A DNA stretch of 63,912 nucleotides, filler included, from Octopus bimaculoides (lineage: Eukaryota): assembly GCF_001194135.2 (NCBI RefSeq). It is 4 parts of 4 records of this genome, joined end to end, with 100 filler letters (N's around TTAATTAATTAA, not from the genome) between each part and the next. Parts side by side here need not be neighbours in the genome. Positions count along the whole stretch, not along the records: positions 1 to 24,162 come from NC_068983.1; 3 more parts are not named here. One strand, given 5' to 3'. The notes under the pieces were generated by a model that did no database searches, had not been told where the DNA came from, and was given only the letters and a program-made list of their open reading frames with translations. This document shows, in pieces, positions 5,325-6,445 of this stretch; positions within the stretch are counted from its first letter, which is position 1; each line of letters opens with the position of its first letter. Made by a program: the position numbers and the translations under genes.

Positions 5325-5757
5325 TACATTTATTAATTGTTAGTAAGGACACAATATTTAGTTTTGCAGCCATAATACAACCATCATATACTACCAAGTA
5401 TAATAAAGGTTTACAAGTGAATATTGTAACTTACTTTCTGTGTTATCGGTGTCATATTCTCATTTTAAAGTTTATCTCCTCTATAGATTTCATACAGAAT
5501 TCTGAGCTAACACTGCAAGTAAAGACATTTCATATACAAATATGTCTCTGTAAATAATGCGATTGACAATAGAAAAAATAGGTAATGGGTGTATATGCAT
5601 ATTTCAAGAATTATTGCTCTGTCATCAGTAGCACATCCAACACATTAACTACCCACAAACACATTGCTTAAAAACCCATGAAGTTCAGCCATGTAACATT
5701 GTTGGATAGACCAATTTACATATTAAGCATATTCATAGAAATGGGTATGTAAATTGC
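5325..5757 (-). mobile_element. Hammerhead-containing ~383-bp repeat unit A (retrozyme-like), inverted copy
   Basis: Reverse complement aligns along its length with 5756-6146 (e.g. catcagtagcacatccaacacattaactacccacaaac vs the reverse complement of gtttgtggatagtcgatggattggatgtgttgctgatg). Contains a hammerhead core. Confidence 0.8.
5577..5653 (-). ncRNA. Type I hammerhead ribozyme (unit A)
   Basis: Minus strand reads CTGATGA-cagag-caataa-ttctt-GAAA-tatgcata-TA. Distal stem I ggtagttaatg/cattacctatt pairs 10/11. Confidence 0.7.
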
Positions 5758-6137
5758 CTGCAATTAATATATACTAGTCACCAGGAATGTGTTTAATATG
5801 TAAATTTTTCTATCAGTAGTGTTACACTGCTAATCTTAGTGGATATTTAAGGAATGCGTTTGTGGATAGTCGATGGATTGGATGTGTTGCTGATGAAAGA
5901 GCAAGAACTCTTGAAATAGGTATATACACTCATTACCTATCTTTTCTTTCTTTGATTGCGTTGTTTACATCGATGTATTTGTATATGATGTCGTAACTTG
6001 CAATGCTGCGTCTGAATTCTATAATAGAAAATCTGTAGAGAAATGAGAACATTGCATTGCTAACACAAAAGTAAGAACCAATATTGACTTATAAACCTCT
6101 AATGTATTATGGTTGCAAAACGAAATACTGTGTCCTT
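5756..6137 (+). mobile_element. Hammerhead-containing ~383-bp repeat unit B (retrozyme-like)
   Basis: Starts gcctgcaat (5756); next unit starts gccagcaat (6138). Diverged direct repeat of unit C; non-coding. Confidence 0.8.
5865..5941 (+). ncRNA. Type I hammerhead ribozyme (unit B)
   Basis: CTGATGA (5890-5896), stem II aagag/ctctt with loop caagaa, GAAA (5913-5916), short stem III, UH at 5925-5926. Stem I gatagtcgatg/cattacctatc pairs 9/11. Confidence 0.8.
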
Positions 6138-6445
6138 GCCAGCAATATTTACATACCAGTTGCCAGTATTATGTTTAACATGTAAATTGGACTATCCAAT
6201 TGTGTTACACCTCTAAACTTAGTGGGTATTTAAGCAATGTGTTCATGGATAGTTGATGCGTTGGATGTCATGCTGATGAAAGAGCAACAACTTCTGAAAT
6301 ATGCATGTACACCCATTACCTATTTTTCCTATCTTTGATTGCATTGTTTACATAGATATGTTCATATACGAAATTTCATGACTTGCAGTACTTTATCTGA
6401 ATTTTATGGAAAATATATAGAAAAAAATTAGAAAATGAGAATTGT
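6138..6445 (+). mobile_element. Hammerhead-containing repeat unit C (3'-truncated tandem copy)
   Basis: Direct repeat of unit B up to aaatgagaa (~6445), then similarity is lost. Confidence 0.78.
6248..6324 (+). ncRNA. Type I hammerhead ribozyme (unit C)
   Basis: CTGATGA (6273-6279)-aagag-caacaa-cttct-GAAA-tatgcat-GTA (6307-6309). Stem I pairs 10/11; stem II partly disrupted. Confidence 0.7.

What the first reader, a model, noticed from the sequence alone, without database searches (positions are those of the whole stretch)
5325..6445. Retrozyme-like array: ~383-bp non-coding unit, each copy carrying a type I hammerhead ribozyme
Seen: three diverged copies of one unit (A inverted, B and C tandem). 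Each has the full core CUGAUGA / 5-bp stem II with a CAANAA hexaloop / GAAA / short stem III (palindromic UAUGCAUA in A) / UH, plus a bulged stem I whose distal helix pairs 9-10 of 11 in all copies. One stem I position keeps pairing while changing from G.U to A-U. Predicted cuts after 5926 and 6309 would release a 383-nt monomer. Known: loop II-stem I bulge contacts activate natural hammerheads (the Schistosoma Sm-alpha loop is CAAAUA). Tandem 170-400 bp hammerhead repeats (non-LTR retrozymes of coral, mussel and axolotl) give abundant circular RNAs. Inference: this is a cephalopod retrozyme family, possibly undescribed; these particular copies are old and may be weakly active.
Basis: partly seen in the sequence, partly recalled or inferred. 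Interest (0 to 1): 0.9.

Follow-up and report, generated by a model that had tools for sequence, protein, structure and literature searches.

The report
Decayed hammerhead-ribozyme tandem repeat (retrozyme relic)
Three old, mutated copies of a ~385-base non-coding repeat each carry the signature of a self-cutting hammerhead RNA; the repeat family looks like the "retrozyme" mobile elements known from mussels, corals and salamanders, but neither standard ribozyme models nor the available RNA data show it is active.

Summary
Positions 5313-6438 contain one inverted copy (A) and two tandem copies (B, C) of a ~383-bp AT-rich non-coding unit. Each has CUGAUGA, a 5-bp helix II with a CAANAA loop, GAAA, a short palindromic helix III and UA at the predicted cut.

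The unit is a repeat family of a few hundred units, mostly tandem, found in five coded species. The read-derived consensus is a much better type I hammerhead than any window copy. It has a GGUG/CACC helix I start, a perfect helix II, and folds at -17 kcal/mol against -4 to -9. None of the 12 core positions varies at 8% or more of reads, against 31 of 92 other positions (p=0.011). Only the free position N7 varies.

The negatives are real:
- No Rfam hammerhead hit, even at about 9 bits.
- A model built from three validated retrozyme ribozymes scores the copies within noise.
- The 10.1-11.1 pair is A-U, not the canonical G-C.
- The monomer is not rod-like.
- RNA-seq shows background-level, two-strand coverage, no end pile-ups at the cut sites, and family pieces embedded in longer transcripts.

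Verdict: a relic of a hammerhead-bearing, non-LTR-retrozyme-like (Penelope-associated) family. It is a new member of a known kind, and its activity is unproven.

The parts
5282..5312 (.). (GT)n microsatellite abutting the outer end of the inverted arm
   Evidence: Sequence. It dominates the read pile-ups. Insertion next to microsatellites is described for Penelope-like elements (PMC8557442).
5313..5759 (-). Inverted arm: copy A (full unit about 5336-5751), plus about 8 nt of a preceding unit's end (5752-5759) and about 23 nt that weakly resemble the start of a next unit (5313-5335, tentative)
   Evidence: 71-77% identity to B and C. Ends compared by eye with the loose-end consensus.
5577..5646 (-). 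Hammerhead motif of copy A. Core CUGAUGA is at 5628-5622, GAAA at 5605-5602, the palindrome AUAUGCAUAU at 5602-5593, H17 at 5592. Predicted cut between 5592 and 5591. Degenerate: C.U at 10.1-11.1 and A.C at 2.1-1.1.
   Evidence: Hammerhead-constrained fold is -6.3 kcal/mol against a free MFE of -19.0.
5752..5764 (.). Head-to-head junction (near-palindrome ATTGCCTGCAAT). Both arms start a few nt before a unit start.
   Evidence: (I4). This junction is the source of the spurious plant-miRNA hairpin hits.
5765..6146 (+). Copy B, a full unit. It carries a private deletion near 6105 relative to the family.
   Evidence: (loose ends at 6105).
5872..5941 (+). Hammerhead motif of copy B. Core at 5890-5896, perfect helix II AAGAG/CUCUU, GAAA at 5913-5916, H17 at 5926. 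Predicted cut after 5926. The helix III palindrome is broken (UAGGUAUA) and helix I has U.C at 2.3-1.3.
   Evidence: Constrained fold is -9.3 kcal/mol.
6147..6438 (+). Copy C, lacking about the last 90 nt of the unit
6255..6324 (+). Hammerhead motif of copy C. Core at 6273-6279, helix II AAGAG/CUUCU (A.C at 10.2-11.2), GAAA at 6296-6299, H17 at 6309. Predicted cut after 6309.
   Evidence: Constrained fold is -4.2 kcal/mol.

Best explanation
The locus is an old composite insertion of a non-coding, tandem-forming repeat family whose master copies carried a type I hammerhead ribozyme. This makes it a relic of a non-LTR-retrozyme-like element, probably mobilised by Penelope-like elements.

Inferred mechanism for the ancestral element:
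- Multimeric transcripts of the tandem units fold into hammerheads. Helix III is too short to be stable alone (3 bp) but is palindromic (AUAUGCAUAU).
- Two neighbouring ribozymes can therefore pair through it to form a double hammerhead and cut after the UA (positions 5926 and 6309 here).
- This would release ~383-nt monomers that a host ligase could circularise and a Penelope-type reverse transcriptase could copy back into DNA as tandem, partly inverted arrays.

Shown: the repeat architecture, family membership, multi-species presence, the core motif, the better consensus helices, and core invariance.

Inferred: catalysis, dimer use, circles and the mobilising enzyme.

The three window copies have mismatches in helices I to III and are most likely inactive.
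For: Architecture.

Family size and arrangement:
- A few hundred units at >=80% identity. Raw DNA reads give 250-370 per run on the ribozyme block, against about 0.7 on a B-private stretch.
- The units are mostly tandem. Reads leaving the unit end at 6146 continue with the unit's own start, and tandem joints appear in four other species.

Consensus:
- The read majority gives GGAUGUGGUG-CUGA(U/A)GA-A(A/G)GAG-CAAUAA-CUC(U/C)U-GAAA-UAUGCAUAUA|CACCCAUUACCUAUU, from three independent reference copies.
- Of the 8 majority corrections to copy A, 4 turn mismatches into Watson-Crick pairs in helix I or II, and 1 turns G.U into G-C. The other 3 lie outside the helices.
- The hammerhead-constrained fold improves from -4.2, -6.3 and -9.3 kcal/mol in the copies to -17.4 and -19.8 in the two consensus variants. 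Helix I becomes 4+4+7 bp with two 5'-strand bulges.

Constraint: 0 of 12 core positions are polymorphic at >=8%, against 31 of 92 other positions (p=0.011). The only varying core site is N7, the one position free to vary.

Helix III: the palindrome self-duplex is -9.5 kcal/mol, while the monomer hairpin is not predicted to form. This matches the dimeric mode described for metazoan type I hammerheads (PMC4209133; PMC7229834).

Fit to retrozymes:
- Unit size (mussel 350-390 bp), low GC and absence of ORFs match non-LTR retrozymes.
- The motif satisfies the CUGANGA / GAAAY / RUH rule used by those authors.
- An inverted copy next to tandem copies beside a microsatellite is the insertion pattern described for Penelope-like elements.
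Against: - No Rfam hammerhead model matches.
- A covariance model built from the validated coral, mussel and axolotl retrozyme ribozymes scores A at 6.8 bits and B at 6.6 bits (E about 4), below spurious hits.
- The 10.1-11.1 pair is A-U in 89% of copies, where G-C is described as highly conserved.
- Position 2.1 is A in 24-46% of copies opposite an invariant C1.1.
- The 10.2/11.2 frequencies match on the A reference (27-39% G vs 41% C) but not on the C reference (29% G vs 56% C). Covariation is therefore suggestive only.
- The 383-nt monomer folds no better than shuffles: z = 0.01 (+ strand) and 0.37 (- strand).
- TRF does not call B-C as a tandem repeat.
- RNA-seq depth per copy is about the same as for flanking unique DNA, with both orientations equal and no read-end pile-ups at 5926 or 6309.
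- RNA contigs carrying family pieces run on into unrelated sequence in 73-99% of cases.
Confidence: 0.68

Rival explanations
1. An ordinary AT-rich satellite or SINE-like tandem repeat that happens to contain a hammerhead-like string. No ribozyme ever functioned. The apparent conservation reflects recent common ancestry and alignment selection.
For: - No covariance-model support from Rfam or from a custom model.
- The 10.1-11.1 pair is a non-canonical A-U.
- There is a sizeable share of A.C mismatches at 2.1-1.1 and 10.2-11.2.
- The fold is not rod-like.
- There is no RNA signature.
- The read sets were selected at >=80% likeness, which inflates apparent conservation.
Against: - The motif without helix I is expected only 0.003-0.025 times per window.
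- The independently derived consensus adds a canonical helix I and a perfect helix II.
- Core positions are 0/12 variable against 31/92, and only N7 varies.
- The palindromic helix III, the unit size and the tandem habit all coincide with known retrozymes.
Confidence: 0.18
2. The unit is not a free-standing non-autonomous element. It is the terminal repeat (pLTR) of an autonomous Penelope-like element, and this locus is a solo or truncated remnant.
For: - Penelope-like elements carry hammerheads in their pLTRs.
- They insert as partial tandems with an inverted 5'-truncated copy, often at microsatellites.
- Retrozymes and pLTRs are phylogenetically intermingled in Xenopus.
Against: - There is no reverse transcriptase or GIY-YIG ORF anywhere in the 24-kb piece.
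- Reads leaving the unit mostly enter another unit, not a longer element.
- Published PLE min-hammerheads have a 7-8-bp helix II, a 4-5-bp helix I and an extra nucleotide before 10.1, which this motif lacks.
Confidence: 0.1
3. These very copies are still active and produce 383-nt circular RNAs.
For: The core nucleotides are intact in all three copies. B and C are in tandem, as needed for release of a monomer.
Against: - Helix defects are present in all three copies. Constrained folds are -4 to -9 kcal/mol, against -18 to -21 for competing folds.
- The palindrome is broken in B.
- There are no read ends at the cut sites, and coverage is at background level.
Confidence: 0.04

Closest known systems
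Non-LTR retrozymes of invertebrates, especially the Mytilus galloprovincialis family (Cervera and de la Pena 2020, PMC7229834)
   Same: - Non-coding, low-GC tandem units of about 350-390 bp, each carrying one type I hammerhead.
- Hundreds to thousands of copies.
- The loops lack the archetypal tertiary-contact nucleotides.
- Helix III is short with a palindromic loop.
   Different: - The mussel ribozyme has G10.1-C11.1, C15.2-G16.2, C17 and a 4-bp helix II (sequence). Here these are A-U, U-A, A17 and 5 bp.
- Mussel units give circular RNA at up to about 1% of total RNA and fold into rods. Here RNA is at background level and there is no excess folding.
Amphibian satellite 2 / axolotl retrozyme hammerheads (dimeric type I)
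   Same: A weak helix III with a palindromic loop, so efficient cleavage is expected only as a double hammerhead in multimeric transcripts. The units are ~330-350-nt tandem repeats.
   Different: There is no sequence similarity beyond the core. The axolotl family has about 10^5 copies and abundant RNA.
Minimal hammerheads in the pLTRs of Penelope-like elements (Cervera and de la Pena 2014, PMC4209133)
   Same: Palindromic 15.2-16.2/loop 3, high sequence variability within a genome, tandem plus inverted genomic arrangements, and low expected activity as a monomer.
   Different: PLE min-hammerheads have a longer helix II (7-8 bp), an unpaired nucleotide before 10.1 and a conserved G10.1-C11.1. 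No PLE ORF is linked here.
Schistosoma Sm-alpha hammerhead
   Same: Type I topology, a hexaloop on helix II beginning CAA, and a bulged 5' strand of helix I containing GGAUGU. The Sm-alpha sequence is recalled from memory and was not tested.
   Different: Sm-alpha has a 6-bp proximal helix I, a 4-bp G-C-rich helix II and C17. It is recognised by Rfam Hammerhead_1, while this motif is not.

Membership tests
Hammerhead ribozyme (type I) | Conserved core C3 U4 G5 A6 N7 G8 A9 / G12 A13 A14 / A15.1-U16.1 / H17 (not G), in the right order and spacing | tested here: met
   All three copies and the family consensus have it. 0 of 12 core positions are polymorphic at >=8% in raw reads.
Hammerhead ribozyme (type I) | Three helices around the core, with helix I open and helices II and III capped | tested here: met
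   Met by the family consensus: helix I is 4+4+7 bp with bulges, helix II is 5 bp, helix III is 3 bp. The window copies meet it only partly, with mismatches in helix I (all three) and helix II (A and C).
Hammerhead ribozyme (type I) | Match to a curated covariance model (Rfam Hammerhead_1, HH9, HH10, II, 3) | tested here: not met
   No hit at gathering score, at E<=10 on 1.4 kb, or on a 106-nt slice with a floor of about 9 bits.
Hammerhead ribozyme (type I) | G10.1-C11.1 pair (highly conserved in canonical and PLE hammerheads) | tested here: not met
   A10.1-U11.1 in 89% of family reads. The pair is C.U in copy A.
Hammerhead ribozyme (type I) | Compensatory covariation in the helices | tested here: inconclusive
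   At 10.2/11.2 both A-U and G-C variants exist. Their frequencies match on the A reference but not on the C reference. No per-copy sequences were obtainable, so haplotypes are unknown.
Hammerhead ribozyme (type I) | Site-specific self-cleavage | not testable with these tools
   This needs in vitro transcription. RNA-seq shows no end pile-ups at 5926, 6309 or 5592, but depth is only about 30-90.
Non-LTR retrozyme | Short (150-450 bp) non-coding tandem repeats of low GC, one type I hammerhead per unit | tested here: met
   The period is 383 bp, GC is 31-33%, and there are no ORFs. The family is mostly tandem genome-wide.
Non-LTR retrozyme | Operational 'active retrozyme' call: TRF-detectable array with at least 2 consecutive units bearing complete hammerheads (Li et al. 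2026 preprint) | tested here: not met
   TRF does not report B-C. The helices are incomplete in the window copies.
Non-LTR retrozyme | Abundant unit-length linear and circular RNA | tested here: not met
   Per-copy RNA depth is about that of flanking unique DNA, and both orientations are equal. RNA contigs embed family pieces in longer transcripts. Library type (poly-A or total RNA) is unknown, so absence is not proven.
Non-LTR retrozyme | Highly self-paired (rod-like) monomer | tested here: not met
   z = 0.01 (+ strand) and 0.37 (- strand) against shuffles for 5927-6309. This was tested on a decayed copy only, not on a full-unit consensus.
Non-LTR retrozyme | Co-occurrence with autonomous Penelope-like elements in the same genome | not tested
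   The literature reports only remnant, hammerhead-less Naiad PLEs in cephalopods. The genome itself could not be searched.

The most novel reading that the evidence does not exclude
A previously undescribed retrozyme lineage shared by a group of related (apparently octopod) species. Its hammerhead is an Rfam-invisible variant with A10.1-U11.1, U15.2-A16.2, A17, a 5-bp helix II with a CAAUAA loop, and a 15-bp doubly bulged helix I. Younger tandem copies elsewhere in these genomes would still self-cleave as dimers and give circular RNAs. If so, covariance-model surveys have been under-counting animal hammerheads.
Probability: 0.3. Interest if true: 0.55.

Novelty: new member of a known kind. 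Interest (0 to 1): 0.36.

Why it matters
If the consensus cleaves, this extends retrozymes to a clade where the searchable literature reports none. It would also give a concrete natural hammerhead variant that every curated model misses, which helps calibrate ribozyme surveys. The locus itself is a relic with no evident present-day function. The wider biology (tandem hammerhead repeats mobilised through RNA) is already established in other molluscs, cnidarians, insects and amphibians, so the gain is incremental.

Tried and rejected
- Rfam scans at three sensitivities found no hammerhead. The best 'hits' were plant miRNA hairpins caused by the head-to-head A/B palindrome, and these were rejected.
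- A covariance model was built from three experimentally validated retrozyme hammerheads (coral, mussel, axolotl Ax353). A fourth, Ax330, was dropped because MAFFT misaligned its GAAA. The window copies score 6.6-6.8 bits, within noise. The model is small and sequence-biased, so this is a weak negative.
- Exact 25-mer scans of the metagenome and viral contig collections, run to obtain real family sequences, gave 0 hits. Per-copy haplotypes and an R-scape-type test were therefore impossible.
- I first read 6146 as a fixed 3' terminus with AT-rich flanks. I rejected this after raw reads showed that the 'flank' consensus is the unit's own 5' start.
- A candidate target-site duplication, AATTGTTTA (5318-5326 / 6440-6448), is not significant: 50 of 500 shuffles do as well.
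- The rod-like fold test on the 383-nt monomer gave no signal.
- TRF on the locus does not call the array.
- An attempt to name the organism through a repeat string in the literature gave no hit.
- A Pfam scan of a mariner-like reading frame upstream gave no hit.

Full report
**What is in the sequence**

Positions 5313-6438 hold three copies of one non-coding unit.
- B (5765-6146) and C (6147-6438, lacking about the last 90 nt) are head-to-tail with a 382-383-bp period and 75-82% identity.
- A (about 5336-5751) is inverted and 77-79% complementary to them.
- A and B meet head-to-head at a near-palindrome (5752-5764). Each arm begins a few nucleotides before a unit start.
- The outer end of the A arm abuts a (GT)n microsatellite (5282-5312).
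- There is no further copy in the 24-kb piece and no ORF of note, only low-complexity and gap-spanning frames.
- GC is 31-33%.

**The hammerhead-like motif**

The motif satisfies the CUGANGA / GAAAY / RUH rule used by the retrozyme authors.

- Helix II is perfect only in B. A has C.U at 10.1-11.1 and C has A.C at 10.2-11.2.
- Next to the core, helix I has only two contiguous pairs in B and C and a mismatch at 1.1-2.1 in A.

Without any helix I requirement the motif is expected 0.003 times (strict) or 0.025 times (one helix II mismatch) per shuffled window. The three sites descend from one ancestor and count once.

Rfam gives no hammerhead hit at gathering thresholds, at E<=10 on 1.4 kb, or on a 106-nt slice around copy B, where matches down to about 9 bits are listed. 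The only notable hits are plant miRNA hairpin models that match the head-to-head junction.

I also built a covariance model from three experimentally validated retrozyme hammerheads. Their sequences (coral Amil224, mussel Mg353, axolotl Ax353) come from the supplement of PMC7229834. With filters off it scores copy A at 6.8 bits and copy B at 6.6 bits (E about 4), below several spurious hits. By sequence-plus-structure similarity, these copies are not recognisable members of the curated hammerhead families.

**Family-level evidence**

Public runs of the source species (names coded) and four other species contain the unit many times.
- Two of those species also hold this very locus at about 95-96% identity, so the insertion predates their divergence.
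- Raw genomic reads give 250-370 reads per run on the ribozyme block and about 95-124 on the unit end. A stretch private to copy B gives about 0.7. This implies a few hundred units at >=80% identity, a very rough calibration.
- Reads that leave the unit at 6146 continue with TAATAT(A/G)TAC(A/G)TACC..., which is the unit's own start (compare B at 5765). Most units are therefore followed by another unit, and the family is mainly tandem. This corrects my earlier reading.

The majority letter at each position, obtained independently with A, B and C as reference, converges on this consensus:

...GGAUGUGGUG CUGA(U/A)GA A(A/G)GAG CAAUAA CUC(U/C)U GAAA UAUGCAUAU A|CACCCAUUACCUAUU

Of the eight majority corrections to copy A:
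- Four turn mismatches into Watson-Crick pairs in helix I or II (5621, 5629, 5631, 5642).
- One turns G.U into G-C (5610).
- Three lie outside the helices.

The hammerhead-constrained fold improves from -6.3 (A), -9.3 (B) and -4.2 (C) kcal/mol to -17.4 and -19.8 for the two consensus variants. Helix I becomes GGUG/CACC, a bulged U, GAUG/CAUU, a UG bulge, then AAUGGGU/ACCUAUU. A non-hammerhead fold remains 6-8 kcal/mol more stable, which is common for natural hammerheads embedded in larger RNAs.

In C-referenced raw reads, where depth is flat, none of the 12 core positions is polymorphic at >=8% of reads, against 31 of 92 other positions (one-sided Fisher p=0.011). The one varying site inside CUGANGA is N7 (U about 65-70%, A about 30-35%), the single position free to vary. 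Caveat: 19 low-support rows of that table were not shown.

**Limits of that evidence**

- Covariation is only suggestive. The 10.2-11.2 pair occurs as A-U and as G-C. On the A reference the frequencies agree (G 27-39% once clipped reads are added, C 41%). On the C reference they do not (G 29%, C 56%), implying A.C in at least about a fifth of the copies.
- Position 2.1 is A in 24-46% of reads opposite an invariant C1.1.
- The 10.1-11.1 pair is A-U in 89% of reads, whereas G-C is described as highly conserved (PMC4209133).
- Reads were admitted at >=80% likeness, which favours conserved blocks.
- No per-copy sequences could be fetched. Metagenome and viral scans for a 25-mer found nothing.

**How it probably worked**

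The monomer helix III hairpin is not predicted to form. The 10-nt palindrome AUAUGCAUAU self-pairs at -9.5 kcal/mol. This is the arrangement described for most metazoan type I hammerheads: a short helix III with a palindromic loop, inactive as a monomer and active as a double hammerhead in tandem transcripts (axolotl data).

The inferred cycle is that of non-LTR retrozymes:
- transcription of arrays;
- dimer-mediated cleavage to unit length;
- ligation by a host ligase;
- reverse transcription by a Penelope-like element.

The local architecture fits the insertion pattern reported for Penelope-like elements: an inverted copy next to partial tandem copies, beside a microsatellite (PMC8557442). 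A 2026 preprint argues that animal retrozymes derive from PLE terminal repeats. All steps after 'motif present and conserved' are inference.

**Evidence against present activity**

- In three RNA-seq runs of the species, coverage of the family is 30-90 reads where DNA runs of equal size give about 250. That per-copy ratio is similar to the flanking unique DNA.
- Both orientations are equal, coverage does not drop at the predicted cut sites, and no read-end pile-up occurs there.
- In four assembled RNA runs, contigs carrying family pieces continue into unrelated sequence in 73-99% of cases. They are passengers in longer transcripts.
- The 383-nt monomer folds no better than shuffles (z 0.01 and 0.37).
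- TRF does not detect the B-C array.
- Library types are unknown, so circles in non-poly-A RNA are not excluded.

**Comparison and novelty**

The closest known kind is the non-LTR retrozyme, especially the mussel family (350-390-bp units, loops lacking the archetypal contacts).

Features met: unit size, tandem habit, low GC, no coding capacity, type I core and helices in the consensus, palindromic helix III.

Features not met or untested: covariance-model match, G10.1-C11.1, abundant circular RNA, rod-like fold, self-cleavage, a PLE partner.

The searchable literature has no hammerhead or retrozyme report for cephalopods.

I file this as a new member of a known kind, represented here by decayed copies. 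Confidence that the family's ancestors carried a working hammerhead is about 0.7. The main rival, a fortuitous motif in an ordinary tandem repeat, is about 0.2.

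Noticed in passing
window 5704-5815, both strands: Rfam low-threshold hits to plant miRNA precursor models (MIR2593 at 35 bits, MIR5649, mir-1277). They are produced by the head-to-head A/B junction, which folds as a long imperfect hairpin, so they are artefacts. 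Read-through transcription of the locus would still make a ~400-bp imperfect dsRNA.
   Followed up: partly
window 5540-5700 and 6215-6345 (family reads): On the hammerhead-sense strand, polymorphic sites among family copies are more often A/G than C/U. On the C reference: G>A 13-14 and A>G 5-6, against C>T 8-9 and T>C 4-6. The mirror image is seen on the inverted A reference. This strand asymmetry would fit an RNA or cDNA-level mutation process (editing or deamination) during retro-copying. It was not tested against base composition.
   Followed up: no
window 5545-5575 and 6328-6360 (compared with loose-end consensus): The family consensus carries CpGs (CTATCTTCGATCGCATTGTTTACATAGACG) where the window copies read TG/CA (for example TTTGATTGCATTG). 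This is typical methyl-CpG decay and agrees with the copies being old.
   Followed up: partly
window about 4800-5237, + strand: A broken reading frame ending ...FHLPFSPNFASYDFWLLSKLKEKMKE...KWLECYKCIEVRRSYLEGNENF* resembles, from memory, the C-terminal part of a mariner-type transposase. Pfam gave no hit at E<=0.1, so this is unconfirmed.
   Followed up: partly
window 17490-17650 (-) and 17890-18020 (+): Two inverted copies of a ~130-nt repeat (...GGATGCCCTTCCTAACGCCAACCACTC... / CTGAGGACTGGTGAAACC...), each ending in a (ATC/GAT)n run. They flank a ~180-nt segment with a tRNA-like look (17700-17830). This looks like a SINE-type composite. ARAGORN finds no tRNA.
   Followed up: no
window about 7120-7200, - strand: A tRNA-like string (GGCACGTGGCTTAATGGTTAGGGTATTCAGCTC...GGTTGTGAGTTCAATTTCTGG) next to long CT-rich low-complexity sequence. 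This is probably a tRNA-derived SINE head. ARAGORN does not call it.
   Followed up: no
window 3990-4340, 9420-9900, 11330-12100, 17320-17510, 23270-23600: Runs of N (1654 in all), each flanked by TA, CA or GT microsatellites. These are assembly gaps at simple repeats. ORFs listed across them are meaningless.
   Followed up: no
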